Below are positions 5,311 through 59,255 of a stretch of DNA of 64,000 nucleotides, piece by piece. Source of the DNA: Obrimoposthia wandeli (Eukaryota); assembly GCA_977020255.1 (NCBI GenBank), contig CDROCS010001688.1, forward strand, positions 62,001-126,000, in the 5' to 3' direction. A program made the translations under genes and the position numbers. Position 1 is the first letter of the stretch, and each line of letters begins with the position of its first letter. The notes below the pieces were generated by a model. The model saw only the letters and a program-made list of their open reading frames with translations. It made no database searches and was not told where the DNA came from.

Positions 5311-6840
5311 TTACTCCTGGCAGAAAAATTCAGGTGACGTAACAGCAACATAGAGCGTGCTTTGAATGCGATTGTCTGTTTGTGTAGGGCTTATTTTGTT
5401 TATTAGCATATCGGTTAAATAGGTCGCTAATTCTTCTGACATTAAGCCACCAAAAAAACGTTCATTAATCAGTGCTACATAATCTGTTGGTGATGCTTCA
5501 AGTTGTTCATACTCAGAGCGACTCCAAACCCAATGTTTATCATTTTTGTTTTTGTAGGCAAGAATATTACTCCAGAATCGGTTGTGGATCCGTCGCATGA
5601 TATCGGTAGTCAGAATGTTGAATTCAGGTGCAGTAAGATCAAGATCTGCTATTTCACCTTGAGGGGCAAAATCTGATGTGTAGAAGTTAAAAACACTGGA
5701 AGCGGCGAGTGGTGCTTGCCCTAAATTATGTTCTGTTCCTTGAAAGTTCCACCAACGCTCACCGACAGATGTCATATTCAATGCACGAGCTTGGTTGGCA
5801 ATGGTAATAATAGGTTCTTTTAATAAGCCAAAGTGCTGTTTACGGGCTCTACGCCCATTGCCTGCAGCATTTGCTCTGCCCTTAAAGACATCGGCATCGG
5901 TTAGTACGGATTTTAATGTTGCTTGAAGATCACCTCTTACACCTTCACCGTTATCTTTAAATGCTTTTGCCACGCGTGAAATATAACCGTTACGTGGGTT
6001 ACTGGTTACAAAACGCTTAATCAATAAGTTTGCAATAAACATAGGGGTATTGGGGTGGTTAAATAATACATCTAGCGCTTGTTGCAGATCTTGCTCGGCA
6101 CTTTGTTCTGCTGAAAAGCGTTTCTTAAGTACGATTTTTTCGTTTGTGTCATGCCTGTTATTATCGGCATACATAGGGTCAAAATCGTTTGTACGGCGCC
6201 AACCCGTCAATACACGCGCAAGTTCTTCGACATCATGCTGTGTGTAAGTTGGAATTTTATTCCCTTCGGCATCAAGCTTTGGCTTTCCATTACCACGTAA
6301 CTTCCAAAGGCCTAGTGAAAAAAGCTGCATGACTTCTCTTGCATAGTTTTCATCAGGAAAGGTATTTTTATCTGGATTGGCTTTTTGACTCCCTTCAAGC
6401 GTTAAGTAGCGGCCCATGATTGGGCTGAGTGTCACTTTCTCTAGAACATCTCGAAAATTACCAAAAGCGTGGTTAACTAAAATATCGTAGTAATTTGCTA
6501 ATTCGGCATGCCGGTTACCTATGCCGTGTTTAGATACCACAAAAATTTGGCTTAGCGCATAAGCCATACGTTGACGCAGTTGATCATTCGCTTCAAGGGC
6601 ACACTGCCACCATGCCCCAAGGCGCATGTTGTCGTTAACATCAGCATTGGTTAAAAGTGCAAAAGCTTGTGCTTTCGGTAAATGATAAGAGGGGGATGAT
6701 GAAAACTGTTGGCTAAGCCATGTATCAAAGCCATTTTGCTGCAATTGATCAATCTCGCCTTGTTGAGGTCCGAACGAACCTCGATAGAGAAATTTGGCAC
6801 ATTGTTGTCTGTCATCACTATAGATTGTGGTATCGGTCAT
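5311..6840 (-). CDS. DUF1800-family protein
   Basis: QLRQRMAYALSQIFVVS, PDENYAREVMQLFSLGL, DVEELARVLTGW, HPNTPMFIA; directly upstream of DUF1501, the usual pairing. Confidence 0.85.
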   Translation of the reverse strand: MTDTTIYSDDRQQCAKFLYRGSFGPQQGEIDQLQQNGFDTWLSQQFSSSPSYHLPKAQAFALLTNADVNDNMRLGAWWQCALEANDQLRQRMAYALSQIFVVSKHGIGNRHAELANYYDILVNHAFGNFRDVLEKVTLSPIMGRYLTLEGSQKANPDKNTFPDENYAREVMQLFSLGLWKLRGNGKPKLDAEGNKIPTYTQHDVEELARVLTGWRRTNDFDPMYADNNRHDTNEKIVLKKRFSAEQSAEQDLQQALDVLFNHPNTPMFIANLLIKRFVTSNPRNGYISRVAKAFKDNGEGVRGDLQATLKSVLTDADVFKGRANAAGNGRRARKQHFGLLKEPIITIANQARALNMTSVGERWWNFQGTEHNLGQAPLAASSVFNFYTSDFAPQGEIADLDLTAPEFNILTTDIMRRIHNRFWSNILAYKNKNDKHWVWSRSEYEQLEASPTDYVALINERFFGGLMSEELATYLTDMLINKISPTQTDNRIQSTLYVAVTSPEFFCQE

Positions 6841-37262: not shown

Positions 37263-37277
37263 TGATAATTATTATCA
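37263..37277 (+). promoter_or_regulatory. Fur box
   Basis: Perfect 7-1-7 TGATAAT-T-ATTATCA, 40 nt upstream of the iron ABC operon. Confidence 0.88.
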
Positions 37278-37317
37278 TTAGTATTATCGTTAAATATCTT
37301 TGTTGTTGTAAAATACT

Positions 37318-38475
37318 ATGAAAAACGCGTTTAAGTTACTTTGTCTCTCATCGGCACTATTATCATTTTCGTCAATTGCTGCACAATTTCCTGTCACTGT
37401 TACTGATGTTTCTGGTCGTCAGATTACGATTGAATCACAACCCGAGAATATTGCCTTATCGACAGGTCGTGTTTTTCCATTACTAGAAATCATTTATCAA
37501 CAAGAAGCCGCTGACCATCTTGTTGCTTGGCGCGATGATATGCGTCTTTCTGCACCGAGTATGTACGCCAATTATATTAAAGACTTCCCGCAGCTTAAAG
37601 ACGTTCCTCATATTGGAAAAATTAAATCGGGGGAATTTGATACCGAACGCTTTATTAATATGAAGAACCGACCGGATCTTTTTATTGTCGATATTTCCAA
37701 TATAAAACTAGCAGAAGAAAAGGGGCTTATTGCTAAATTAGATAAGTTAGGCATTAAGGTTATTGCTATTGATTTTCGTGAAGACCCTGTAAAAAATACC
37801 GTGAAATCTGTTACAACGTTGGCTAAAGCATTGGGTAAAGATGAGCAGGGAAAAGCATTTGCAGATTATTACCAACAGCATGTGAAAAGCTTAACGAATG
37901 TAGTCGCGGCATTGCCTGCATCAGAATTTAATAAGCGTGTATTCATCGAGCGTGCGGCGGGCTATGACGGTTCTTGTTGTCAAACATTTGCGACCGGTAA
38001 TATGGGCGCATATATCCCTTATTTAAAAGCAACGAACATTGCAGATAAGCCCCTGAAAGGCGCGATTACAGGGCAGATGTCACCAGAAAGTGTTATCAGT
38101 GCTCAGCCTGATGTATACATCATGCAAACAACGGGTTGGATTGATAAAAAAGGGAATGCAACGAGCGGCGTTCCATTTGGCTACGCCCCTTTGAATCAGG
38201 CTGCAATTAGCAAAGCCACTAGCAAATTGATGGATCGTTCATGGTTAAAGGCCATGAATGCTTACCAGAATAAGAACGTGTATTCGATTTATATGCCTTT
38301 TTATAACTCACCATACAATTTAGTCGCAATGGAATATTTTGCTAAGTGGGTTCATCCGGAACAGTTCAAAGATCTGAATCCAGAAAAAACATTTGAAGAA
38401 ATGAATCTGAAATTTGCTAATCGTAAAGCGACAGGTGTATTTGGTCAAAATAACTTCGAGGCAATGAAGAAGTGA
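37318..38475 (+). CDS. Iron-chelate ABC transporter substrate-binding protein
   Basis: Signal peptide; FPVTVTDVSGRQITIESQPENIAL; ESVISAQPDV; KWVHPEQF. Confidence 0.88.
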   Translation: MKNAFKLLCLSSALLSFSSIAAQFPVTVTDVSGRQITIESQPENIALSTGRVFPLLEIIYQQEAADHLVAWRDDMRLSAPSMYANYIKDFPQLKDVPHIGKIKSGEFDTERFINMKNRPDLFIVDISNIKLAEEKGLIAKLDKLGIKVIAIDFREDPVKNTVKSVTTLAKALGKDEQGKAFADYYQQHVKSLTNVVAALPASEFNKRVFIERAAGYDGSCCQTFATGNMGAYIPYLKATNIADKPLKGAITGQMSPESVISAQPDVYIMQTTGWIDKKGNATSGVPFGYAPLNQAAISKATSKLMDRSWLKAMNAYQNKNVYSIYMPFYNSPYNLVAMEYFAKWVHPEQFKDLNPEKTFEEMNLKFANRKATGVFGQNNFEAMKK

Positions 38476-39518
38476 GTTCAATTGCCCTTGAGCTAACCGC
38501 TCATCGTGCTCGTAATCAGAAAAAGAAGATTGCCTTGGCTGTTTTCTTTATTATGAGCATTATTTGTTTAATCGCAGATATTCTTATTGGATCGCAAGGT
38601 TTAACTCTTGATCAAGTATTGAATGGTATTTTTCATCCGTCGTCGAGTGATATTGCTAGCCGTATCATTATTTGGGATATTCGTATGCCAATGTCTTTGA
38701 TGGCACCTTTAGTTGGCGGGGCTTTAGCATTAGCTGGGGCGCAAATGCAAACCACGCTGAATAATCCACTCGCCGATCCTTATACGTTCGGCGTATCGGC
38801 TGCTGCTGGTTTTGGTGCGTCTTTAGTTATTACAAATGTGATTGCTATTCCATTCATTCCGGTTGAATACCAAGTTGCATTCATGGCATTTATTATGTGC
38901 TTGGTAACGACATTCATGATTGCTGGCGTGTCTTCTATAAAGCGCGTGTCGATAGAAGGTGTAATGCTATTTGGTGTGGCAATCATGTTTGCCTACGACA
39001 GCATGCTAACCATGATGCAATACATCGCGACAGAAACTCAGCTGCAAACATTAGTTTTTTGGCAAATGGGATCATTAGATCGTGGTAGCTGGGAAAAAAT
39101 CACGATTCTCGCTATTCTATTACCCGTTGTTCTTGCCATTATGATGAAAGATTCATGGAAGTTGTCGACGCTTAAAATTGGTCAAGAACGTGCAGAATCA
39201 ATGGGGATAAATGTTAATCGGTTACGTGTTAAAACCTTATTATTAGTCTCTGTTATTACTTCTCTTTCGGTGTCTTTTGTCGGTGCTGTTGGTTTTGTTG
39301 GGTTGGTTGCACCGCATATTGCCCGCATGATATTAGGTGAAGATCAACGCTACTTCTTACCAGCCTCTTTCTTGTTAGGCGCAGTCTTATTAGAGTTGGC
39401 TTCTATTGCAAGTAAATCAATTATGCCGGGTATTATTCTGCCTTTAACCGTTGTGATGTCGATGGTGGGTATACCGTTCTTTATTTTCTTAATTGTGAAA
39501 AAGGGCGGTAAGTTCTAA
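38472..39518 (+). CDS. FecCD/BtuC-family ABC permease
   Basis: IWDIRMP, NNPLADPYTFGVS, GQERAESMGIN, FVGLVAPHIAR. Confidence 0.92.
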   Translation: MSSIALELTAHRARNQKKKIALAVFFIMSIICLIADILIGSQGLTLDQVLNGIFHPSSSDIASRIIIWDIRMPMSLMAPLVGGALALAGAQMQTTLNNPLADPYTFGVSAAAGFGASLVITNVIAIPFIPVEYQVAFMAFIMCLVTTFMIAGVSSIKRVSIEGVMLFGVAIMFAYDSMLTMMQYIATETQLQTLVFWQMGSLDRGSWEKITILAILLPVVLAIMMKDSWKLSTLKIGQERAESMGINVNRLRVKTLLLVSVITSLSVSFVGAVGFVGLVAPHIARMILGEDQRYFLPASFLLGAVLLELASIASKSIMPGIILPLTVVMSMVGIPFFIFLIVKKGGKF

Positions 39519-40264
39519 TGGCGCTTAAAATTAGTAATCTCTCTGTGTCGTTTGGCGGTAACCGTGTATTGAATGACCTAACAATTCCAGAGATTCATGC
39601 TGGTGAAATGGTCTCGTTAATTGGCAAGAATGGGGCAGGGAAGTCGACGGTACTCAAACAAATGACCAAGCTGATCCGGTTTAATCCTCATTTGATCACC
39701 TTGGCTGGCAAACCGTTGGTTCTTGATGAAATTGGTTATCTGCCGCAAGATCACCGTATTACAGCGAGTATCAGTGTGGTCGAATTACTTATTACGACGA
39801 TGCATGTTGGATCAAGTTCATTATTTACCAAAGCCGATAGTGCAGAAAAAGCATTAACCTTATTACACAGTATTGGCATTATTCATTTAGCGAATAAAAT
39901 TTGTACTGAATTGTCAGGTGGTGAAAGTCAGATGGTAGGCTTAGCGCAAGCGGTTATTAATAAACCCAAAGTGTTGATATTAGATGAGCCGACGTCAGCA
40001 CTGGATATGAGTAACCAGCTTAAATTGCTTGAGTATGTAAAAGCGTATACACGCCAGTATTCAGCGTGCGCTTTAATGGTGGTACATGATTTGAATCTCG
40101 CTATTCAGTATTCCGATAAAGTGGCAGCATTGCACGACGGACGACTTTTTGCGTATGGTGAACCAACACACATCATTGATGAACAGTTAATCAAAGACTT
40201 GTTTAATGTGAAGTCTCAAATCATTCAGCTGGATGACTACCCTGTGGTTGTGGTGCGTTCATAG
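39518..40264 (+). CDS. Iron-chelate ABC transporter ATPase
   Basis: GKNGAGKST, LSGGESQ, LDEPTSALD, HDLNLA. Confidence 0.92.
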   Translation: MALKISNLSVSFGGNRVLNDLTIPEIHAGEMVSLIGKNGAGKSTVLKQMTKLIRFNPHLITLAGKPLVLDEIGYLPQDHRITASISVVELLITTMHVGSSSLFTKADSAEKALTLLHSIGIIHLANKICTELSGGESQMVGLAQAVINKPKVLILDEPTSALDMSNQLKLLEYVKAYTRQYSACALMVVHDLNLAIQYSDKVAALHDGRLFAYGEPTHIIDEQLIKDLFNVKSQIIQLDDYPVVVVRS

Positions 40265-50420: not shown

Positions 50421-50480
50421 TTTTCAGCAAAGAGCAGTAAACGTTCACTGTAAGTGATACTGAAATTTAATAACGTATTA

Positions 50481-50510
50481 AACCGTTGCTTCAGCAAGCA
50501 GCGGTTTTTT
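50481..50510 (+). terminator. Rho-independent terminator after the MATE gene
   Basis: aaccgttgctt-cagc-aagcagcggtt plus T tract. Confidence 0.8.
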
Positions 50511-50561
50511 ATTGCCTAAGCATCGTTATTTTGTATGCATTAATCGCAATTAATAATATTA

Positions 50562-50580
50562 AATGAGAATCATTCTTGAT
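50562..50580 (+). promoter_or_regulatory. Fur box
   Basis: AATGAGAATCATTCTTGAT, about 55 nt upstream of the S9 peptidase-receptor operon. Confidence 0.75.
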
Positions 50581-50633
50581 CTCATTCGTGTTGATGTGTA
50601 TTATTTGCGAAAAATCGCTTCTATAAGTTTATT

Positions 50634-52643
50634 ATGTTGTTAAGTTCTGTGTTGTTAGCTTCGATGCTACAGAATCCTCTTTGTGATGTTTGCTGGTTAC
50701 GTGATGATAGTCGTAAAAATACGACGGTATTGGCGTATTTAAAAAATGAAAATAAAACATCTGAACACTATTTAAAACCATTGATGGGCACACAGGAAAA
50801 GCTACTCAATGAATGGGAAGCTATGGTTGGAAATAAAGCAGAATCGCCTTGGTTAGATATTAATGGGTACTACTATAGAACCTTAAATAAAGGTGTTCGT
50901 GGCGTAGTGATTCGAAAAAATCAGCAACGTGAAGATGTTGTAATTAATATGAACCAGCGCGCACAGAATCATACTTATTATAATTTAGGGAATTGGAGTG
51001 TTAGTCCCAATAACCGTTTAGTTGCAATTGCAGAGAATATCGTAGGTGATGATAATTATATTATTTCCGTTATCGATATAGCATCAGGTGAAACACTAAC
51101 TCAATTTTTGGGTGAGTATGCAGATACCTTGGTGTGGAAATCAGACAATGAAGTGATTGTTGTTGAAAATGAAGCCAACACATATAGACCATATAAAGCG
51201 GTATTACGAAATATTAAGACAAACACGTCAGTCACGTTATACCAAGAAACCAATCCTGCTTGGTTAGTCTCTGCTTATATCGCATCCGATGCGAAAAGCA
51301 TTCTTATTCAGAGTAATAATCATAATACGAGTGTTCAATACCTATTACGTTCAGAAGAAAAATTGGGTATAGATCCAAAAGCAGCGCTTCGATTGGTTAA
51401 ACCTCGAAAAAGTAGTGTTGAGTATTATGTCGATGTGCTGGATAGCAAGTATTACATAAAGTCTAATCAAGGTGGGAAATTTGCAATTTACACTGCGCAG
51501 GATGTGCAACGTGAATGGACGCCCATTATCCAGCCTAAAGGGGAGATCACTCGTTGGCACCTTGCTAATCGCCGTATTGTGATTGAAGATAAAAAACAAG
51601 GAATAACATTACTGGAAGGTTTTGATCTTCAGGGCAAAAAAGTATTCAGTAATAACCTGTCAAAAGCAGCATCTGTTGGGTGGATGGCCCGAAATACAAA
51701 CCCAGCCAGTCAGACGATTAATATACGTACCATGGGGTTAAGCCAACCACCAGCATGGACAAAGCTAAACATAGAGACAGGTGAAACAGTCAGTTCAGAG
51801 GCTGATGTATATAACCAATTTGAAACGAATAATTACGTATCAGAATTAATAAGTGTAAACCATCAAGGTGTAGAGGTTCCTGTATCTCTGGTATACCGCA
51901 AAGATATGCTTACCGACGATTCACCAGTATTCCTTTACGGTTATGGTGCCTATGGCGTCACGATGCGCCCTTATTTTATGCCACAGATTATTTCATTAGT
52001 CGACCGAGGTGCAGTGTATGCCATTGTGCATGTTCGTGGTGGTGGATTTAAAGGCGATGATTGGTATCAGGCAGGTAAAGGTGTAAACCGACTTAATAGT
52101 ATTCAAGACTTCATTGCAGCTGCTCAAGTAATGAAACAATTTCGTGCAGGATCATCGTCGACAAAGAAAGTGGGCAGGGACATTTTAGCACTAGGTAGCA
52201 GTGCCGGTGGTACGCTTGTCGCTGCAGCAATCAACCAACGTCCTGAGTTATTTAAAGGGGCTGCACTGCAGGTGCCATTTGTTGATGTATTAAGCAGTAT
52301 GTCTGATGAATCGATTCCATTAACTCGCCAACAATATGCTGAATGGGGAAACCCGAATAAGCCTGAAGAACGTAATGTAATGCGTGCTTATAGCCCATTT
52401 GACAATATTTCAGCACAAAACTATCCCGCTCTGTTGGTTCGAAGTGGCTTATTTGATAGTCGCGTACCTTACTGGGAAGCGGCTAAATATACTGCACGTA
52501 TTAAAGCATTATCGACAGCTAATAATCCTTATTTATTAGTCACAGATTTGCAGTCTGGACATAGTACAGACCGCACTAAGGCACTACGCCAACAAGCGAT
52601 GGATTACGCATTTTTGCTCAATCTGACCAACCTTAATAAATAA
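50634..52643 (+). CDS. S9A prolyl oligopeptidase / oligopeptidase B-like, probably exported
   Basis: YGYGAYG, HVRGGG, GSSAGG (Ser), DSRV (Asp), SGH (His); short hydrophobic N-terminus. Confidence 0.9.
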   Translation: MLLSSVLLASMLQNPLCDVCWLRDDSRKNTTVLAYLKNENKTSEHYLKPLMGTQEKLLNEWEAMVGNKAESPWLDINGYYYRTLNKGVRGVVIRKNQQREDVVINMNQRAQNHTYYNLGNWSVSPNNRLVAIAENIVGDDNYIISVIDIASGETLTQFLGEYADTLVWKSDNEVIVVENEANTYRPYKAVLRNIKTNTSVTLYQETNPAWLVSAYIASDAKSILIQSNNHNTSVQYLLRSEEKLGIDPKAALRLVKPRKSSVEYYVDVLDSKYYIKSNQGGKFAIYTAQDVQREWTPIIQPKGEITRWHLANRRIVIEDKKQGITLLEGFDLQGKKVFSNNLSKAASVGWMARNTNPASQTINIRTMGLSQPPAWTKLNIETGETVSSEADVYNQFETNNYVSELISVNHQGVEVPVSLVYRKDMLTDDSPVFLYGYGAYGVTMRPYFMPQIISLVDRGAVYAIVHVRGGGFKGDDWYQAGKGVNRLNSIQDFIAAAQVMKQFRAGSSSTKKVGRDILALGSSAGGTLVAAAINQRPELFKGAALQVPFVDVLSSMSDESIPLTRQQYAEWGNPNKPEERNVMRAYSPFDNISAQNYPALLVRSGLFDSRVPYWEAAKYTARIKALSTANNPYLLVTDLQSGHSTDRTKALRQQAMDYAFLLNLTNLNK

Positions 52644-52660
52644 TAATAAGTAGTATACCC

Positions 52661-54778
52661 ATGAATAAGACAGTACTCGCTGTAGCGGTTTCTGCACTCT
52701 GCGGAAATGTACACGCTGCTGATATGTCATCAACACAATCGAAAAATACATCTGTTTCTCAAACAAATGTCGTGATGGTAACCGCTCAAAAAATTGAAAA
52801 AGAACCTTATGAAGTGAATGGCTCCGTAACGGTTATTACATCTGACGAACTGGAACGTAAAGGTGCAACAGAACTTTATGATAGTTTGAAGAATATTCCT
52901 GGTGTCAGTGTTAGCGGTGGTGCGGGGCGCCCTCAAAATATTACGATCCGTGGTATGCGTGGTAACCGTATTAAAATCATTGAAGATGGTGTTGAAACGG
53001 GTGACGGTTACGGTGCTGATGATTTAAGCGACAAAGTGGGGCGTAATAGTTTTGATCTGTCTGCGGCGAAACAACTCGAAGTAGTAAAAGGTGCAGGATC
53101 CTCCCTTTATGGTTCTGGTGCCCTTGGTGGTCTAATTGTAATTACGACCAAAGATGCGTCTGATTACCTTACACCGAATAAAAATACCGCGGTTGAAGTT
53201 AGTACTAATTATGTGGGTGAAAGTGACAAAATAAAAGGCACAGTGAACTTTGCACAACGTATTGGTTCGTCTGAACACCTAATTCGTTATAGCCAATGGA
53301 CAGGAGGTGAATCTGAAAATTATACTGGAGAAGTATATGATCGAGATGTTGACGGATTTGATCTTTCTTTAACCAGTAATTTTTATATTGGTGATCATCA
53401 AGAAATCAAAACTAAAGTTTCTTATTACGAAGATACAATGGATCGCAATGATCATGATAACTATAAGTCTGGTGATTTTAACGAAAACACAGTTACCTCG
53501 TCTAATAAATATCAAGCGACGTATTTGTATAACGATGCTGATTTTGTATTATTTGATGACGCGAAAATATTGGCTTACTATCAATCAACCAAAAGTAACA
53601 ATAACAAAAAACGATATAAAACTAAGCTAGTTCAAAATATAAATTACAAAAAATTGTACCTTGAGAACGGTCAGTTTGAAGAAGAAAAAGTGGGGTTGAA
53701 AGCAGAGTTCCAACGCTACCTTGATAACCAAAATATAGTATGGGGTGTTGATACTGTTTTTAAAGAACATTCAAGAACACTTGGAAAAGCCACTATTAGT
53801 GATGGCACTACATCTATTTCTGAAACGAATCCTTTTGCTGATGCCAATACGTTTAATACTGGACTGTATGCACATGATGACATTATGTGGAATGCATGGG
53901 ATATCGGTTTAGGTGTTCGATATGATTTTCACCAGTTAACCCCGAAAGATAAAAATCAACTAGCCAGTAATGGCTATAACTCAGCCCTTAGTGATGCTAC
54001 ATCAAGTGAAATATCACCGTCATTCTCGATAGGTTATAACTTCACCGATGAACTGAAGACGTATTTTAGCTATAACCACGGTTTCAATTCACCTAATTAT
54101 GCCAAAGTGTATGGCTATGTACCTCATGATGGTGTGCCGCCATTTGAGATAGTACCCAATTATGATCTGAAAGCAGAAACAAGCGACAACTTTGAGATTG
54201 GTGTGAAATCTCGCATGGGTATTTACAGTGTCAATGCGGCGGTGTTTTACAGCAGTTTTGATAACTTCATTCGCACGAAACAAACGGGTATGAACAGTGA
54301 TAATGGCCGTCTAACAATTCAATATGTCAACCTCGACAAAGTGGAGTCATACGGCTTTGAGATGGGTGCAAGTGCAGAAGTCAGCGAGACTGTAACCGCG
54401 TCTGGTAGTGTCGGCGTAGTGACTGCAGAAGAAGAGAACGGCGCATACGTTGAAACGTCGACCCCGTGGGAAGGTAATTTAGCGCTAGATTATAGCCAAG
54501 ATTTTGATGCGTTTGTGCGGTGGAATTTTGCGGCTGCAATGAACAAAGTGCCAACTTGTTCTAGCGGTGAATGTGTGACCACAGCTGGCTGGGGAACGGT
54601 TGATTTAGGCCTAAGTTATGAGCCTATTACCGATCTATTTATTAGTGGCAACCTTAATAACCTCTTTGATCGTGAATATGTACGTTACCAAGATGTAGGT
54701 GGCATGTCGGATGCGCAATCAAAATACAATGCTGAAGCGGGACGTAATTTTAACGTCTTCCTGAAGTATAACTTTTAA
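52661..54778 (+). CDS. TonB-dependent outer-membrane receptor (heme/hemoglobin, HutR-like)
   Basis: Signal peptide; TonB-box-like VVMVTAQK; plug IPGVSV...ITIRGM; VVKGAGSSLYGSGALGG; NLFDREY; C-terminal LKYNF. Confidence 0.9.
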   Translation: MNKTVLAVAVSALCGNVHAADMSSTQSKNTSVSQTNVVMVTAQKIEKEPYEVNGSVTVITSDELERKGATELYDSLKNIPGVSVSGGAGRPQNITIRGMRGNRIKIIEDGVETGDGYGADDLSDKVGRNSFDLSAAKQLEVVKGAGSSLYGSGALGGLIVITTKDASDYLTPNKNTAVEVSTNYVGESDKIKGTVNFAQRIGSSEHLIRYSQWTGGESENYTGEVYDRDVDGFDLSLTSNFYIGDHQEIKTKVSYYEDTMDRNDHDNYKSGDFNENTVTSSNKYQATYLYNDADFVLFDDAKILAYYQSTKSNNNKKRYKTKLVQNINYKKLYLENGQFEEEKVGLKAEFQRYLDNQNIVWGVDTVFKEHSRTLGKATISDGTTSISETNPFADANTFNTGLYAHDDIMWNAWDIGLGVRYDFHQLTPKDKNQLASNGYNSALSDATSSEISPSFSIGYNFTDELKTYFSYNHGFNSPNYAKVYGYVPHDGVPPFEIVPNYDLKAETSDNFEIGVKSRMGIYSVNAAVFYSSFDNFIRTKQTGMNSDNGRLTIQYVNLDKVESYGFEMGASAEVSETVTASGSVGVVTAEEENGAYVETSTPWEGNLALDYSQDFDAFVRWNFAAAMNKVPTCSSGECVTTAGWGTVDLGLSYEPITDLFISGNLNNLFDREYVRYQDVGGMSDAQSKYNAEAGRNFNVFLKYNF

Positions 54779-54789
54779 GGGACGTTGTA

Positions 54790-57105
54790 ATGAAAAAGCA
54801 CCTTTTAGCACTCTTGCTCCCCATTGTCGGTTCTTACTGTACTGCACCGTTAGCCAGTATGATCGACTTTCCGTCAGACTCTTTTTATGTAACGTCTAGT
54901 GATGAAGCAAAGCAACTGCTCGCGCAGCGTTATACGTTAACGGGTTTAGTGAATGAAAGTGTTTCAACGAGTTTGTTGTCTACGCAATATCGATTTTATC
55001 AAGGCTTTGCTAACGCTGTAGCGTGTAGTAGTTCGGTGGTTGTTACTGTTGATATAAACACCAAAGAAGTGATGCAAATTTACACGCACCTTCTAGACGA
55101 AAGTGAATGCCAATCAGCGAAAGAAGATAATCGAGCGATTAATATTAATACGCCAGAGCAAACCTATCGTCCATTTTTGACTGCGGGTAATCCAAAGAGA
55201 ATTGTCACCACGTCATTTAATGTTTTTGACCCTGACCCATTAACGGCACTTGAAGATACAACATTGGAATATTCCGATGTGATATCAAATGCGGCCTATT
55301 CACTGTATTCAGGTATTGAAGTGACAGAAGTGGCTGGTACACGGTATTTAGAAAATAGCCGTGTTAGGGCGGTCGATGTACGTGCTTTTGACCTTGATGG
55401 TGATGGTACCTTGGAAGCAGATGTTAGCCAGCAAGGGATCATAACGTCGGCAAGTGATTTCACGATAGAGCGAGATATAAAGGATTATGAAAATAAGCAT
55501 ACCCAGTTCTTAGATACCATGGCGTTTTATCACATTGATAAATCAGTGCAGTATTTACAGCAACTTGGCTTCGATATTGTCAGTGAAAAACCTGTTCAGT
55601 TTGATGCTTTCTTTGGCAATAAAGATAATTCAACTGCGTACTTAGCCCAAAATGTGATTGTATTTGGCAATGGCGTATCTGCCGATGCAGAAGATGCTGA
55701 TGTGATTTTGCACGAGCTGGGTCATATGATTAATTTCTCTTTAGTTAAACGCTGGCGTGACGGTGATACTGGGGCAATTGGCGAAGGGCTGGGGGATTAC
55801 TGGGCGGCTTCTTCTCGTTATCACAGCAATAAAACGTTTCAACCCGATACCGTATTTCGTTGGGATGGAGTCAATACGTCGAAAACAAGTACGCGTATTG
55901 TGAATGATACCGAAGCGCGCTATCTATCGGGTGCATCGTATCCGGCGCATGTGGTCAGAAATGGCTCTAATGTGGATCAGTTATGGTCAACGCCTTTATT
56001 TCAAGTATTGAAGTTTGCGATTGCTGAACACGGTGAGCCCGCACATGAACATATCGATCGCATTATTTGGGAAGGTATTGCGGCATTAGGTGGTGGAGTC
56101 ACAATGCCTGATGCAGCCCTAAGTATCGTGAAAGCGGCAGAGCGGCTCTATCCTCAAAGCAATTACAGTGATTTATTTGTTAAGCAGTTTAAAGCGCACA
56201 ATATTTTAACGAATACTGTCGCTTTTTATGCGCCGCAGTTCTTGATGGTTAAAAATGGGAAAACCAAGGTTACACTCGATCTGTTTAATATTTCAGGTAA
56301 AAATATTCATACATTTACAGGGCGTTTTGAGCAATCTGATGATGTCGTTTCGTTTGATACCGCTTTAAACAGCAAGAAACAACAATCCATGATCACAGTA
56401 AAAGTACCCGACAGTACGCAGTGTGGTGATGCATTCACGCTTAATGCTGAAACGGTTACAGATTTCAATAACCAGCAAATTCCTACTCAAGGTGAATACA
56501 GCATTCCGTTTGTTGTGTGTACACCCAAACTGACTCATACACCAAAAGTGGAGAACTCAGACTTGAGTGATGCAACCTCTACAGAAGGGGGGCTCGGGGG
56601 GAATAAAATTGGCGTTAAATCGTATTTACTAACCTTAGCTGACACCGCCGTACTGGATAACGATTTTGCAGTTTCACTGCATATCAAACATAAGCGCATG
56701 TCTGATTTAAAAGTCACGCTAACGCCACCTGTTGGCGATCGTGAAATAACATTGCTCGCTTATGAAAATATTCCGCAAGATGAATTTAACCAGCAATTAA
56801 TGTCTCGATTTAACCAGCAAGTTAATCGCTTAAAGGGCGAATCACTTGAAGGTACGTGGACGTTAAAAGTAACCGATCGGGCTGTGGGTGAAAGTGGAGA
56901 GTTGGTCTCTTGGGGAATCGCGAATATTTCAGGTTATAGCAAACCAGAAACAGCAACAGCAACAGATGAAACGAATAATAACAATAACAATAATGGAAAC
57001 AACGGAGCGACGGACAATGGCAGCGGATCGGGTGGAGGAAGCCTAGGTTGGTTGTCGTTGTTTATGCTTGTCATCATTAATAAATTAAGAAAAAATACTC
57101 CGTAA
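54790..57105 (+). CDS. Secreted zinc metallopeptidase (M36/M4-like gluzincin) with P-domain and GlyGly-CTERM anchor
   Basis: VILHELGH plus AIGEGLGDY; HKRMSDLKVTL...GTWTLKVTD...SW (P-domain); SGGGSLGWLSLFMLVIINKLRK. Confidence 0.85.
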   Translation: MKKHLLALLLPIVGSYCTAPLASMIDFPSDSFYVTSSDEAKQLLAQRYTLTGLVNESVSTSLLSTQYRFYQGFANAVACSSSVVVTVDINTKEVMQIYTHLLDESECQSAKEDNRAININTPEQTYRPFLTAGNPKRIVTTSFNVFDPDPLTALEDTTLEYSDVISNAAYSLYSGIEVTEVAGTRYLENSRVRAVDVRAFDLDGDGTLEADVSQQGIITSASDFTIERDIKDYENKHTQFLDTMAFYHIDKSVQYLQQLGFDIVSEKPVQFDAFFGNKDNSTAYLAQNVIVFGNGVSADAEDADVILHELGHMINFSLVKRWRDGDTGAIGEGLGDYWAASSRYHSNKTFQPDTVFRWDGVNTSKTSTRIVNDTEARYLSGASYPAHVVRNGSNVDQLWSTPLFQVLKFAIAEHGEPAHEHIDRIIWEGIAALGGGVTMPDAALSIVKAAERLYPQSNYSDLFVKQFKAHNILTNTVAFYAPQFLMVKNGKTKVTLDLFNISGKNIHTFTGRFEQSDDVVSFDTALNSKKQQSMITVKVPDSTQCGDAFTLNAETVTDFNNQQIPTQGEYSIPFVVCTPKLTHTPKVENSDLSDATSTEGGLGGNKIGVKSYLLTLADTAVLDNDFAVSLHIKHKRMSDLKVTLTPPVGDREITLLAYENIPQDEFNQQLMSRFNQQVNRLKGESLEGTWTLKVTDRAVGESGELVSWGIANISGYSKPETATATDETNNNNNNNGNNGATDNGSGSGGGSLGWLSLFMLVIINKLRKNTP

Positions 57106-57119
57106 TAATAGGTGAAATA

Positions 57120-58598
57120 ATGAATTTTAAACTTTCCATCGTTGGTGCAATTGTCAGCATTGCACTAACCGGTTGTAATGGATCTTCCGACTCTGTTTTA
57201 GATGGTGTTTCTACTGGTGGCACAGACTCTAAATTAACGTATACGTTAACAGGTAAACTTAGCGAGGGGTTCAGTGACGGCATAATGGCTTGTGTCGATC
57301 TTAATAGCGATTTGACGTGTGATGATAGTGATATCGTTATCGAATCAACGAATGGTACTTTTACACTAAAAAGTGACAGCTCTTCGTTATTAACCAAACC
57401 TATCGTGGTCTATGGCAGTAACGTAAATTCAGTGAAGCTATCTAATGGGTATGATTTCAAGCTGGTAAGCCCAGCATCGAAAGAGTTTGGAGAAGGTAAG
57501 GTTATTACGGTTTCAGCTGTATCATCGCTTGTTTTTTCAAAAATGAATGATGCGATAAACCCGTTATTATTTTCAGGTGCAGTGAAAAGCGTTAAACAAT
57601 CCCTTAATACATATATCAGCAGTGATATAGATAATATTTTTGAGATTGAATTGTCTGATGAGGCTGAAAAGCAGAAACTCAATCATTTTAATGACAACTT
57701 TGTACAGTACATGAAAGAGCTTGATGCAAACGGAGGGTTTAAATCAAGCTTATTGAAAGTTGGTACTGAAGCTGAATACGTTGTAAAAGCTTTTGCTGCC
57801 GATGATAAAGATGCAATAGCGATAGTTAAAAATAAAATTAAAAATAATACCCTTAAAGCTTTTGGTTCTAATGATACGGGTGTAACTCAATATTTTGTAA
57901 ATGGTGAAATGCAAGCGCAAGTCAGTGATGAGTTTCCAGGGCAAGATGCCGATTATGGTCTTGATAGCAATGGAAAGTCAGGATTTAACTTGGTTAAAAT
58001 TGACAATAAAGGTAACGAGCTTACACAAAACGCTCAGAATTGGGATTGTGTAAAAGATCTTAATACTGGCTTTATGTGGGAAGTAAAGGTTGATGATGTG
58101 TCAAGCCCGCGCGATAAAGCGCGAGGATACGAACTGAAAACGACAACCTATACACCTAACAGAAATGATCATGCTTCTGCGACGTGCAGTACTGATGGAA
58201 ACAGTGATTTTTGTAACACCGAGCAATACGTTACCCACATTAATACAATCAAGCTATGTGGTAACAGTGATTGGCGTTTACCAACGGCTAACGAGCAATT
58301 TGATTTACTGGATCTGAGTGAATCGCGAACACTGCCAAATACAGATTTACAAACGGGTATGAATTTAGATTTCTTCCCATATGTAAACGGTGGTGATGCT
58401 GATTATGGCTGGTATTGGAATACGACCCGTTTTACAACGGATGATCCCGAAGCGCTTATTTATACCAGTGTAGATCAAGCAGGAGATACCATTGGGGATC
58501 TGACTTATGGTATTGATCTTTGTAAGAACGATAAAGCCGTCGATGAAGATGGTTGTTATTACGAGAATGCGCTATTGGTTCGCTTGGTTACAGAATAA
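57120..58598 (+). CDS. DUF1566 (Lcl C-terminal domain) lipoprotein
   Basis: Lipobox ALTGC; NDTGV...PGQDADYG, CVKDLNTGFMWEVK, LCGNSDWRLPTANE. Confidence 0.82.
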   Translation: MNFKLSIVGAIVSIALTGCNGSSDSVLDGVSTGGTDSKLTYTLTGKLSEGFSDGIMACVDLNSDLTCDDSDIVIESTNGTFTLKSDSSSLLTKPIVVYGSNVNSVKLSNGYDFKLVSPASKEFGEGKVITVSAVSSLVFSKMNDAINPLLFSGAVKSVKQSLNTYISSDIDNIFEIELSDEAEKQKLNHFNDNFVQYMKELDANGGFKSSLLKVGTEAEYVVKAFAADDKDAIAIVKNKIKNNTLKAFGSNDTGVTQYFVNGEMQAQVSDEFPGQDADYGLDSNGKSGFNLVKIDNKGNELTQNAQNWDCVKDLNTGFMWEVKVDDVSSPRDKARGYELKTTTYTPNRNDHASATCSTDGNSDFCNTEQYVTHINTIKLCGNSDWRLPTANEQFDLLDLSESRTLPNTDLQTGMNLDFFPYVNGGDADYGWYWNTTRFTTDDPEALIYTSVDQAGDTIGDLTYGIDLCKNDKAVDEDGCYYENALLVRLVTE

Positions 58599-58610
58599 GG
58601 GATAAGAAAA

Positions 58611-59174
58611 ATGAATAAGATATTAACGGCTGCATTATTGGTTGTCTCTGCGTGTTCTAGCCATGTACAAGCGGCTACAAAAGCTCAAATTTGTATTCAA
58701 GCACCCCGTACCGCAGCTGATGGTCGTTTTGAAGTCAGTCAAAACGGTACAGTGAAAGATCTGAAAACAGATCTAACATGGATGCGTTGTTTAGTCGGTA
58801 TGAAATGGGATGGCACTAGCTGTAGTAACGATCCTTTATTGCAAACGTGGCAGCCAGCTCTTCAGACAGTAAAAAACATTAATACCAATACTAAGCATTA
58901 TTTATATCAATTTGGTGAGGTTACAGAATGGCGTTTACCTAATATTAAAGAGCTGCAAAGCATTCATGAGTCTTCATGTTTGCAGCCAGCACTCAATGAA
59001 TATGCATTTCCTAATATAGGTAAAGAGCTTGGGGTTAATGCCAGTATGGTATGGTCATCAACTCCAGCACATTGGTCGAAAGAGATTTTCACTTTTGACA
59101 TATCTGATGGCTCAGTGAGTCGACGGGATGCGAGTAGTTCTGAATATCCGATGTTATTAGTGGCTAATCAATAA
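58611..59174 (+). CDS. DUF1566 (Lcl C-terminal domain) secreted protein
   Basis: Signal peptide; GTVKDLKTDLTWMRC, WRLPNIKELQSI, VWSST. Confidence 0.85.
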   Translation: MNKILTAALLVVSACSSHVQAATKAQICIQAPRTAADGRFEVSQNGTVKDLKTDLTWMRCLVGMKWDGTSCSNDPLLQTWQPALQTVKNINTNTKHYLYQFGEVTEWRLPNIKELQSIHESSCLQPALNEYAFPNIGKELGVNASMVWSSTPAHWSKEIFTFDISDGSVSRRDASSSEYPMLLVANQ

Positions 59175-59198
59175 GTAATTTTTGATATTGGTCTAAAT

Positions 59199-59234
59199 AA
59201 AAACGCCAGCTCAGTGTATGAGTTGGCGTTTTTT
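59199..59234. terminator. Bidirectional Rho-independent terminator
   Basis: aaaaacgccagctca-gtgta-tgagttggcgtttttt. Confidence 0.82.
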
Positions 59235-59255
59235 TATCTGCTTAATCCACAGCGA

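What the first reader, a model, noticed from the sequence alone, without database searches (positions are those of the whole stretch)
50562..59234. Fur-boxed five-gene operon couples two unrelated proteases to a heme-type TonB receptor and two DUF1566 proteins
Seen: a terminator, then a Fur box, then S9 peptidase (intact Ser/Asp/His), TonB-dependent receptor, HExxH metallopeptidase with P-domain and GlyGly-CTERM, DUF1566 lipoprotein and secreted DUF1566 protein. Gaps are 11-17 nt and one terminator closes the unit. Recalled: V. cholerae ptrB-hutR and V. vulnificus hvtA operons have this layout, with only the receptor well characterised. Inferred: a 'proteolytic iron mining' machine. A surface-anchored (rhombosortase/T2SS) metalloprotease cuts host or environmental hemoproteins, DUF1566 proteins capture substrate, the receptor imports heme or heme-peptides, and a periplasmic oligopeptidase trims them. 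An alternative is maturation and re-uptake of a peptide metallophore.
Basis: partly seen in the sequence, partly recalled or inferred. Interest (0 to 1): 0.7.

Follow-up and report, generated by a model that had tools for sequence, protein, structure and literature searches.

The report
Iron-regulated heme-uptake operon with helper proteases
This is the Photobacterium copy of a five-gene, iron-repressed heme-receptor operon already shown in Vibrio vulnificus; its four helper proteins (two proteases, two lectin-like proteins) remain untested and probably free heme from proteins outside the cell.

Summary
A terminator, a Fur-box-like operator over the -35 element, five tightly packed + strand genes (gaps 17, 11, 14, 12 nt) and a strong closing terminator lie at 50480-59240. 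The genes encode an oligopeptidase-B-like S9 peptidase, a heme-type TonB receptor, a thermolysin/M36-fold HExxH protease with P-domain and GlyGly-CTERM, a DUF1566 (Lcl_C) lipoprotein and a small secreted DUF1566 protein.

The contig is a Photobacterium close to P. indicum and P. profundum. All 25 other Vibrionaceae loci examined keep the same five genes in the same order. One is V. vulnificus, and its promoter holds the exact published hvtA Fur box. So this is the ortholog of a published operon: RT-PCR showed five co-transcribed genes under Fur and iron control, the last three of unknown function (PMC6813434).

New here:
- Shewanella violacea keeps receptor, protease and both DUF1566 genes, but no S9 gene, next to a CobN-like chelatase.
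- The S9 enzyme has a Sec signal peptide in 20 of 25 orthologs. That is unclear in this clade. Its specificity residues differ from oligopeptidase B.

"Proteolytic heme mining" is plausible but unproven. V. cholerae proteomics found the protease in supernatants, not membranes.

Verdict: new member of a known kind, moderate interest.

The parts
50480..50513 (+). Intrinsic terminator of the upstream MatE gene; it isolates the operon from upstream transcription
   Evidence: 12-pair stem followed by a T run; conserved in four Photobacterium species
50559..50590 (+). Fur-box-like operator (core AATGAGAATCATT at 50562-50574, then TTGATCTCATT) overlapping the -35 hexamer
   Evidence: related motifs lie upstream of the S9 gene in all loci; the V. 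vulnificus ortholog holds the exact published Fur box (PMC6813434)
50576..50604 (+). Sigma-70-like promoter: TTGATC, 17 nt, TATTAT
   Evidence: 9/12 match; invariant in four species
50634..52643 (+). Oligopeptidase-B-like S9 serine peptidase (PtrB-like, 669 aa). Triad S523/D608/H643. R445, Q567 and A569 stand where oligopeptidase B has D460, E576 and D/E578
52661..54778 (+). TonB-dependent heme/hemoglobin-type outer-membrane receptor (HutR/HvtA ortholog, 705 aa). Signal peptide, plug, barrel, H489 between FRAP-like and NPNL-like boxes, C-terminal Phe
54790..57105 (+). Secreted zinc metalloprotease (771 aa): signal peptide, PepSY-like prodomain (about aa 24-130), thermolysin/M36-fold catalytic domain (HELGH 308-312, E332), beta domain (477-600), P-domain (625-710), disordered linker, GlyGly-CTERM (748-768)
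57120..58598 (+). Lipoprotein (492 aa): lipobox LTGC with C19, Ig-like domain (37-134), helical domain (133-242), NDTG/PGQD motif, C-terminal Lcl_C/DUF1566 domain (310-448)
58611..59174 (+). Small secreted Lcl_C/DUF1566 protein (187 aa), type-I signal peptide, conserved Cys near the mature N-terminus
59199..59240 (+). Intrinsic terminator closing the operon
   Evidence: dG -22.2 kcal/mol, z -7.15, T run

Best explanation
This is the Photobacterium ortholog of the Vibrionaceae ptrB-hutR/hvtA operon: one Fur-repressed transcript for a heme-acquisition module.

Shown for orthologs, or read directly from the sequence:
- When iron is scarce, Fur leaves the operator over the -35 element and all five genes are transcribed.
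- The receptor is a heme-type TonB-dependent transporter. HutR and HvtA import hemin.
- The metalloprotease is exported, and its level in culture supernatants depends on rhombosortase.

Inferred:
- The M36/thermolysin-fold protease loses its PepSY-like prodomain and cuts hemoproteins outside the cell, so that heme or small heme-bearing fragments become available to the receptor.
- The outer-membrane DUF1566 lipoprotein and the soluble DUF1566 protein have C-type-lectin-like domains. They bind the protein or glycoprotein substrate, or act as co-receptor partners of the barrel.
- The oligopeptidase-B-like S9 enzyme is exported in most Vibrionaceae and carries altered specificity residues. It degrades short peptides (up to about 30 residues) that reach the periplasm.

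Receptor, protease and the two DUF1566 genes form the conserved core. The S9 gene is a Vibrionaceae addition.

Confidence by layer: about 0.9 for identity as the hvtA/hutR-type Fur-regulated heme operon, and about 0.4-0.45 for the proteolytic heme-release mechanism. The single figure given (0.5) is for the statement as a whole.
For: Anatomy.

Synteny: 20/20 sampled Vibrionaceae loci plus three close relatives keep the five genes in the same order while the flanking genes differ. V. vulnificus and P. damselae do the same.

Link to the published operon: the V. vulnificus promoter contains the published Fur box verbatim. RT-PCR of the five-gene transcript, a fur mutant and iron dependence are reported in PMC6813434.

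Co-regulation: the five V. parahaemolyticus orthologs are listed in the Fur regulon. Their fold changes fall along the operon: 20.7, 11.9, 5.1, 3.6, 2.8 with copper treatment, and -10.5 to -2.4 in a cueR mutant (PMC12341060).

Receptor function: HutR and HvtA act as heme receptors (PMC8706444; PMC12607845).

Protease: VCA0065 is secreted, and its supernatant level depends on rhombosortase. Close relatives of this organism each have one rhombosortase. The protease model matches thermolysin, aureolysin, vibriolysin and M36 structures (E 1e-8, TM 0.66-0.69 on the target), and its zinc ligands are invariant.

Shewanella violacea: a heme-type receptor, the protease and two Lcl_C genes, without an S9 gene. 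Fur-box-like sites lie in the spacer, and a CobN-like chelatase, DUF2149 and an ExbB-like gene lie beside them.

S9 export: classical Sec signal peptides in 20 of 25 orthologs.

DUF1566: a C-type-lectin-like binding fold (PMC11162425).

Expression in nature (weak): marine-sediment metatranscriptome contigs 90-99% alike lie on the S9, receptor and protease genes.
Against: - No experiment links any of the four helper genes to heme use.
- HvtA is only a minor hemin receptor, and a single hvtA mutant was as virulent as the wild type (PMC6813434, PMC8706444).
- VCA0065 was found only in supernatants, never in membrane fractions. It was detected in ordinary cultures, and PMC6219818 describes it as RpoH-regulated. 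So it may be a released, general protease.
- More distant relatives of the protease stand alone, with no receptor or DUF1566 neighbours.
- I recognised no heme-binding motif in the DUF1566 proteins, and their models are weak in the Lcl_C part.
- In this clade the S9 N-terminus has no K/R n-region, so export is uncertain.
- The Fur box is 13/19 to the consensus, which is not significant on its own.
Confidence: 0.5

Rival explanations
1. The helper genes are co-transcribed but do not serve heme uptake. Iron limitation is simply the cue for contact with a host or with detritus. On that cue the cell releases a general protease, two lectin-like adhesins and a peptide-degrading enzyme for colonisation or amino-acid scavenging. 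The receptor imports free heme on its own.
For: HutR and HvtA support growth on free hemin. VCA0065 is a released supernatant protein seen without iron limitation. Relatives of the protease stand alone elsewhere. The one studied DUF1566 domain, in Lcl, is an adhesin.
Against: The five-gene order is kept in 26 loci down to 27-41% identity while the flanks change. The receptor, protease and two DUF1566 genes also travel together in Shewanella. Unrelated functions rarely stay linked this tightly.
Confidence: 0.2
2. The DUF1566 proteins do not capture substrate. They are chaperones, inhibitors or secretion and tethering partners of the proteases, for example a periplasmic inhibitor that protects the cell, as in metalloprotease-inhibitor operons.
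For: A small secreted protein is encoded directly after an exported protease and is always co-inherited with it. The two Lcl_C domains are only 27% alike over 84 residues, which suggests two different jobs.
Against: The fold is lectin-like, not that of a known protease inhibitor. One of the two is an outer-membrane lipoprotein with Ig-like and helical domains typical of surface proteins. I know of no precedent.
Confidence: 0.1
3. The receptor's natural cargo is peptides or heme-peptides rather than free heme. The system would then work like RagAB: a surface lipoprotein binds peptides made by the protease, the barrel imports them, and the exported S9 oligopeptidase digests them.
For: The set comprises a barrel, a surface lipoprotein, a secreted protease and a periplasmic oligopeptidase. 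The S9 enzyme is exported in 20 of 25 orthologs, and its specificity residues are changed in all of them.
Against: The receptor scores above the curated heme-receptor cutoff and keeps the heme-receptor His. Its orthologs import hemin. Regulation is by Fur, not by nitrogen or carbon status. Shewanella has no S9 gene in the cluster.
Confidence: 0.08
4. One reading: the operon matures and re-imports a peptide metallophore.
For: Only the co-occurrence of proteases with a TonB receptor under Fur control.
Against: There is no precursor ORF, since the gaps are 11-17 nt. No biosynthetic or export gene lies in or beside the operon; the neighbours are LysR, MatE, SPOR and umuDC genes. The receptor is of the heme type.
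Confidence: 0.02

Closest known systems
Vibrio vulnificus hvtA operon (ptrB-hvtA-VV2_1550-1552) and the V. cholerae ptrB-hutR region with VCA0065
   Same: The five families occur in the same order, with tight gene spacing and a Fur box upstream of the S9 gene. The protease has a GlyGly-CTERM tail, the first DUF1566 protein is a lipoprotein and the second is secreted (PMC6813434, PMC6219818).
   Different: Identity is only 27-41%. The receptor's FRAP box is degenerate here (FNSP). The S9 N-terminus in this Photobacterium clade lacks the clear signal peptide seen in V. vulnificus.
Shewanella violacea four-gene cluster (heme-type receptor, P-domain metalloprotease, two Lcl_C proteins)
   Same: The core genes occur in the same order, with GlyGly-CTERM, a lipobox and Fur-box-like sites.
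   Different: There is no S9 peptidase. The cluster sits divergently beside a CobN-like chelatase, DUF2149 and an ExbB-like gene. From memory, that set resembles the hmuS-type genes of Bacteroidota heme loci.
Porphyromonas gingivalis gingipains with HmuY-HmuR (and RagAB)
   Same: It works like this: secreted or surface proteases degrade hemoproteins, and a TonB receptor with a surface lipoprotein partner takes up the product (established knowledge; review PMC12094164 was listed but not read).
   Different: The proteins are unrelated: cysteine proteases, the HmuY hemophore and type IX secretion. There is no homology beyond the barrel.
Neisseria bipartite receptors (HpuAB, TbpAB)
   Same: A TonB receptor of the hemoglobin/transferrin/lactoferrin family (TIGR01786 at 350 bits) is encoded with a surface lipoprotein.
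   Different: The lipoprotein here has Ig-like, helical and lectin-like domains rather than a TbpB/HpuA fold. A co-receptor role is only inferred.
Oligopeptidase B (PtrB/OpdB; Serratia enzyme 7ywp)
   Same: It has the propeller plus hydrolase architecture and the catalytic triad. The Glu equivalent to T. brucei Glu655 is kept (E615) (PMC3827171).
   Different: It scores 420 bits against the equivalog cutoff of 1313. D460 is replaced by R or K in 24/24 loci. D/E578 is non-acidic in 24/24. E576 is Q here. The enzyme is exported in most orthologs rather than cytoplasmic.
Thermolysin (M4) and fungalysin (M36) metalloproteases; V. cholerae GlyGly-CTERM proteases VesA, VesB and VesC
   Same: It shares the gluzincin fold, the HExxH...E ligands, a PepSY-like prodomain, a C-terminal P-domain and a rhombosortase sorting tail.
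   Different: It falls below the Pfam M4 and M36 thresholds (16.9 and 14.8 bits) and is 12-16% identical to solved structures. VesA, VesB and VesC are serine proteases.

Membership tests
Vibrionaceae ptrB-hutR/hvtA operon | S9 peptidase gene immediately upstream of a heme-type TonB receptor, followed by three more co-directional genes | tested here: met
   same five families and same order in 26 loci, including V. vulnificus
Vibrionaceae ptrB-hutR/hvtA operon | Fur box in the promoter upstream of the S9 gene | tested here: met
   the V. vulnificus locus holds the published box verbatim
Vibrionaceae ptrB-hutR/hvtA operon | One transcript, repressed by iron through Fur | not testable with these tools
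   Shown for orthologs only (PMC6813434, PMC12341060). Here there are only short gaps, flanking terminators and contigs from an RNA library, which cannot show a transcript.
TonB-dependent heme/hemoglobin receptors (TIGR01785) | Score above the curated cutoff | tested here: met
   365 bits against 317; TIGR01786 at 350 against 324
TonB-dependent heme/hemoglobin receptors (TIGR01785) | FRAP and NPNL boxes with a conserved His between them | tested here: inconclusive
   His489 is invariant in 23/23. FRAP reads FNSP here (FRAP in many relatives). NPNL reads PNYDL.
TonB-dependent heme/hemoglobin receptors (TIGR01785) | Transports heme | not testable with these tools
   Orthologs HutR and HvtA do
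Oligopeptidase B (NF007511 equivalog) | Equivalog score cutoff | tested here: not met
   420 bits against 1313
Oligopeptidase B (NF007511 equivalog) | Ser/Asp/His triad | tested here: met
   S523, D608 and H643 in 24/24 loci
Oligopeptidase B (NF007511 equivalog) | Acidic residues that select basic P1/P2 side chains | tested here: not met
   E576 is Q, D/E578 is A and D460 is R; only the Glu655-type Glu is kept (PMC3827171). The roles of positions 460 and 578 are recalled from Salmonella mutagenesis, not checked here.
Thermolysin/fungalysin-type gluzincins (M4/M36) | HExxH plus a downstream Glu ligand on the thermolysin fold | tested here: met
   Invariant H308, E309, H312 and E332; Foldseek E 1e-8, TM 0.66-0.69 on the target
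Thermolysin/fungalysin-type gluzincins (M4/M36) | Pfam M4 or M36 gathering score | tested here: not met
   M36 at 16.9 against 23.3; M4 at 14.8 against 22.4. Some relatives do pass M36, FTP or PepSY.
GlyGly-CTERM / rhombosortase substrates | C-terminal Gly/Ser-rich motif, hydrophobic helix and basic tail | tested here: met
   TIGR03501 at 19.8 against 15.5; conserved in 17/17
GlyGly-CTERM / rhombosortase substrates | Rhombosortase in the same genome | tested here: inconclusive
   One copy each in P. indicum, P. frigidiphilum and P. profundum. The window's own assembly holds many organisms and seven rhombosortases, so none can be assigned to this contig.
Lcl_C / DUF1566 (PF07603) | Pfam gathering score | tested here: met
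   46.2 and 88.4 bits against 34.9
Bipartite TonB receptor with lipoprotein co-receptor (TbpAB/HpuAB) | TbpB/HpuA-type lipoprotein partner | tested here: not met
   The lipoprotein has Ig-like, helical and Lcl_C domains. The resemblance is functional only.

The most novel reading that the evidence does not exclude
Receptor, secreted M36-like protease and two C-type-lectin-like proteins form a self-contained, previously unrecognised hemoprotein-harvesting module shared by Vibrionaceae and Shewanella. The lectin-like lipoprotein is a true co-receptor and the small one a shuttle. In Vibrionaceae an exported oligopeptidase-B variant with re-charged specificity pockets trims imported heme-peptides, for example those from c-type cytochromes.
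Probability: 0.25. Interest if true: 0.7.

Novelty: new member of a known kind. Interest (0 to 1): 0.4.

Why it matters
The operon is conserved in about a fifth of sampled Vibrionaceae species, including V. vulnificus, V. parahaemolyticus, V. cholerae and P. damselae. Only its receptor has a tested function. If the helpers do free protein-bound heme, that would explain how marine vibrios use hemoproteins from hosts and detritus. It would give DUF1566 its first role outside adhesion. It would also define an exported oligopeptidase-B variant with new specificity. The genes, controls and phenotypes needed to test this are now explicit.

Tried and rejected
- The genome search 'relatives' failed. 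The window's assembly is a 1.35 Gb mix of organisms, so I re-centred the searches on P. indicum.
- A 400-genome sample of the class found only P-domain matches plus one weak catalytic-domain match. That genome had no nearby receptor or S9 gene.
- I first assumed a cytoplasmic PtrB. I dropped that after aligning the N-termini.
- The listing of cluster members did not return the published HvtA accession. It did show that many loci I had taken for 'vibrio' are Photobacterium species. The link to V. vulnificus came instead from the protease homolog's contig and the verbatim Fur box.
- Foldseek found nothing significant for the lipoprotein. VIA-align gave only Z 6.8 to the PgcA non-heme domain, below the level that shows kinship.
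- The ESM Atlas was busy on both tries.
- Read laying returned contigs only, so it shows no strand, level or junction. The pieces across the receptor-protease gap have fewer than 31 letters on one side.
- A search of the Serratia oligopeptidase B paper for residues 576 and 460 found nothing.
- I rejected the peptide-metallophore reading: no precursor ORF and no biosynthetic neighbours.
- No paper in the library joins GlyGly-CTERM with hutR or a heme receptor.
Full report
**What is there.** Five + strand ORFs lie at 50634-52643, 52661-54778, 54790-57105, 57120-58598 and 58611-59174, with gaps of 17, 11, 14 and 12 nt. Pfam and NCBIfam assign them as follows:
- a Peptidase_S9_N plus Peptidase_S9 enzyme closest to oligopeptidase B;
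- a Plug plus barrel TonB receptor that passes the curated heme/hemoglobin receptor cutoff (TIGR01785, 365 bits against 317);
- a protein with only a P-domain and a GlyGly-CTERM tail recognised;
- two Lcl_C (DUF1566) proteins.

The MatE gene upstream ends in a terminator at 50480-50507. A strong terminator closes the unit at 59199-59233 (dG -22.2 kcal/mol, z -7.15). The neighbours are unrelated: a LysR regulator and MatE upstream, a SPOR lipoprotein and umuDC downstream.

**The Fur box.** The core AATGAGAATCATT (50562-50574) is 12/13 to the consensus core and abuts a TTGATC-17-TATTAT promoter at 50576-50604. The window has three such cores against 0.32 expected, and no shuffle of 100 reaches three. 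One of the others lies about 40 nt upstream of a periplasmic-binding-protein/FecCD siderophore-type transporter, which is an internal positive control. The whole block from the Fur box to the ATG is invariant among four Photobacterium species while the spacer 5' of it varies. Taken alone, the 19-mer is only 13/19 to the E. coli consensus, which 15% of random 380-nt windows reach. The case therefore rests on position and conservation.

**Origin.** The proteins are 86-97% identical to those of P. indicum, P. frigidiphilum and P. profundum, and the flanking genes are syntenic. The window's assembly is 1.35 Gb in 6912 contigs and holds seven rhombosortase genes, so it contains many organisms.

**This is a known operon.** The protease has homologs in 32 of 151 sampled Vibrionaceae species. 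In all 20 loci I fetched, the five genes lie in the same order while the flanks differ. Many of these loci are other Photobacterium species, and some belong to the V. splendidus group.

The contig of the V. vulnificus homolog shows S9 (684 aa), receptor (711), protease (763), Lcl_C (483) and Lcl_C (186), downstream of a DEAD-box helicase. Its promoter holds the published hvtA Fur box letter for letter. P. damselae has the same five genes. Identity to the window's proteins is 27-41% for V. vulnificus.

PMC6813434 showed by RT-PCR that ptrB, hvtA and VV2_1550-1552 are co-transcribed. It showed iron and Fur control, and it called the last three products proteins of unknown function. In V. parahaemolyticus the five orthologs are listed in the Fur regulon. 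They change together, with a gradient along the operon: 20.7, 11.9, 5.1, 3.6 and 2.8-fold (PMC12341060). V. cholerae VCA0065, next to hutR by locus number, is a known GlyGly-CTERM putative metalloprotease whose supernatant level falls in a rhombosortase mutant (PMC6219818, PMC12889589).

**The receptor.** It has a signal peptide, a plug, a barrel and a C-terminal Phe. An invariant His (H489) lies between a FRAP-like box (FNSP here, FRAP in many relatives) and an NPNL-like box. HutR and HvtA are heme receptors, HvtA a minor one.

**The metalloprotease.** H308, E309, H312 and E332 are invariant in 17 homologs, and all 17 end in a Gly/Ser-rich motif, a hydrophobic helix and basic residues. The model (mean pLDDT 75.8) shows, in order:
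- a helix plus four-strand unit at about residues 24-130, which I read as PepSY-like;
- a two-lobed catalytic domain;
- a beta domain;
- the P-domain;
- a disordered linker;
- a terminal helix.

Foldseek puts thermolysin, aureolysin, vibriolysin and fungal M36 enzymes on top (E 1e-8, TM 0.66-0.69 on the target, 12-16% identity). Pfam M36 and M4 match only below threshold. Wider relatives in Shewanella, Oligoflexia, Acanthopleuribacter and Pelagibaculum often carry FTP, PepSY or M36 hits, and those I checked stand alone in their genomes. So this is a secreted M36-like bacterial family that was recruited into the receptor operon in a few lineages.

**The conserved core.** Shewanella violacea has a heme-type receptor (TIGR01785, 348 bits), the protease with GlyGly-CTERM, an Lcl_C lipoprotein and a small Lcl_C protein in the same order, but no S9 gene. 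Fur-box-like sites lie in the divergent spacer. A CobN-like chelatase, DUF2149 and an ExbB-like gene lie on the other side. From memory, that neighbour set resembles the hmuS-type genes of Bacteroidota heme loci. Receptor, protease and the two DUF1566 genes are therefore the conserved unit, linked to a tetrapyrrole theme in a second family. The S9 gene is a Vibrionaceae addition.

**The S9 peptidase.** Its best solved relative is Serratia oligopeptidase B (E 7e-114). The triad S523/D608/H643 is conserved in 24/24 loci. It is nevertheless not a canonical oligopeptidase B:
- It scores 420 bits against the equivalog cutoff of 1313.
- The residue equivalent to D460 is R or K in all 24 loci.
- The residue equivalent to D/E578 is never acidic.
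- E576 is Q here, and Q or E in relatives. This is the equivalent of T. brucei Glu607, which binds the P1 Arg (PMC3827171).
- The Glu655-equivalent (E615) is kept.

The roles of positions 460 and 578 are recalled from Salmonella mutagenesis and were not checked here. Twenty of 25 orthologs, V. vulnificus included, begin with a classical Sec signal peptide. The window's clade instead has a short hydrophobic N-terminus without Lys or Arg and a CxxC just before the conserved WLRDD. P. indicum and P. profundum have no second oligopeptidase-B-like gene at E 1e-20 or better. Export is thus well supported for the family and uncertain here.

**The DUF1566 proteins.** The larger one has an invariant lipobox with Asn or Gly after the Cys. 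It continues with an Ig-like domain, a helical domain, an invariant NDTG...PGQDA motif and the Lcl_C domain. Its only fold lead is a weak match to the non-heme domain of the Geobacter lipoprotein cytochrome PgcA (Foldseek E 2.4e-3; VIA Z 6.8 over 132 residues). The small one has a type-I signal peptide and a conserved Cys near its mature N-terminus. The two Lcl_C domains are only 27% alike over 84 residues, so this is not a recent duplication. In Legionella Lcl, the one DUF1566 domain with a solved structure is C-type-lectin-like and binds sulphated glycans. Its authors say the general role of the domain is unclear (PMC11162425).

**How it most likely works.**
Shown or near-certain:
- Fur-controlled co-expression, demonstrated for orthologs.
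- Heme import by the receptor, demonstrated for orthologs.
- Secretion of the protease, with a supernatant level that depends on rhombosortase, demonstrated for an ortholog.

Inferred:
- The protease degrades hemoproteins outside the cell.
- The lectin-like proteins bind the substrate or partner the barrel.
- The exported oligopeptidase clears short peptides in the periplasm.

Evidence against parts of this:
- VCA0065 was found in supernatants and never in membrane fractions, so "surface-anchored" is not supported.
- It is made without iron limitation, and PMC6219818 describes it as RpoH-regulated.
- HvtA is a minor receptor without a virulence phenotype.
- The protease family is otherwise made of free-standing enzymes.

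The main rival is co-regulated but independent colonisation or scavenging factors. The Shewanella core and the strict synteny weigh against it.

**Expression in nature.** Two RNA libraries from one marine-sediment sample yield short contigs, 90-99% alike, on the S9, receptor and protease genes. Contigs cannot show strand, level or a joint transcript, and DNA carry-over is not excluded.

**Verdict.** The unit is a new member of a published operon type. The helper mechanism is an open question that can be tested directly. No paper in the searched library joins the GlyGly-CTERM protease to the heme receptor.

Noticed in passing
window 37267-40264: A second Fur-box core (AATGATAATAATT, 37267-37279) lies about 40 nt upstream of a Peripla_BP_2/FecCD siderophore-type ABC transporter operon (ORFs 37318-38475, 38472-39518, 39518-40264). 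This is probably another Fur-regulated unit. A third core match at 5532 lies inside an ORF and is probably chance.
   Followed up: partly
G000 (whole assembly); window = C1688:62001-126000: The assembly is 1.35 Gb in 6912 contigs and carries seven rhombosortase genes above the cutoff on different contigs. It therefore holds many organisms, and this contig is a Photobacterium close to P. indicum and P. profundum.
   Followed up: partly
L050:635-12471 (Shewanella violacea): A four-gene variant (heme-type receptor, GlyGly-CTERM protease, two Lcl_C proteins) without the S9 gene. It lies divergent from a CobN-like chelatase (1318 aa), DUF2149 and an ExbB-like gene, with Fur-box-like sites in the 153-nt spacer.
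   Followed up: partly
L030:12450-13031; L032:8166-10301; L029:10042-11511: In three related species the module looks damaged. The receptor is split in L030, the protease is interrupted by a TAG in L032, and the lipoprotein appears N-terminally truncated in L029 (and matches only over residues 251-492 in L032).
   Followed up: no
window 50634-50700 and L001-L003, L028: In this Photobacterium clade the S9 protein starts with a short hydrophobic stretch without Lys or Arg and has a CxxC (CDVCW or CDECW) just before the conserved WLRDD. All other orthologs have classical signal peptides and no CxxC.
   Followed up: partly
window 57228-57845 (lipoprotein residues 37-242): The Ig-like plus helical N-terminal half gives its best structural match, weakly (Z 6.8, 132 residues), to the non-heme domain of the Geobacter extracellular lipoprotein cytochrome PgcA (9i0e, 9i0d).
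   Followed up: partly
P0053 and P0056: Photobacterium kishitanii carries two paralogs of the protease, 84% and 47% identical to the window's. I did not check whether each sits in its own five-gene module.
   Followed up: no
window 51720-56231: Marine-sediment metatranscriptome contigs (one sample, two runs), 90-99% alike, lie on the S9, receptor and protease genes. A close relative's operon is thus present, and possibly expressed, in sediment.
   Followed up: partly
literature (PMC4496571, citing Wong and Shyu 1994): V. parahaemolyticus was reported to make 43 and 90 kDa proteases in iron-limited medium, the 43 kDa one degrading hemoglobin. These sizes would fit the pro-form and the mature catalytic domain of this about 84 kDa protease. 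This is an untested lead.
   Followed up: no
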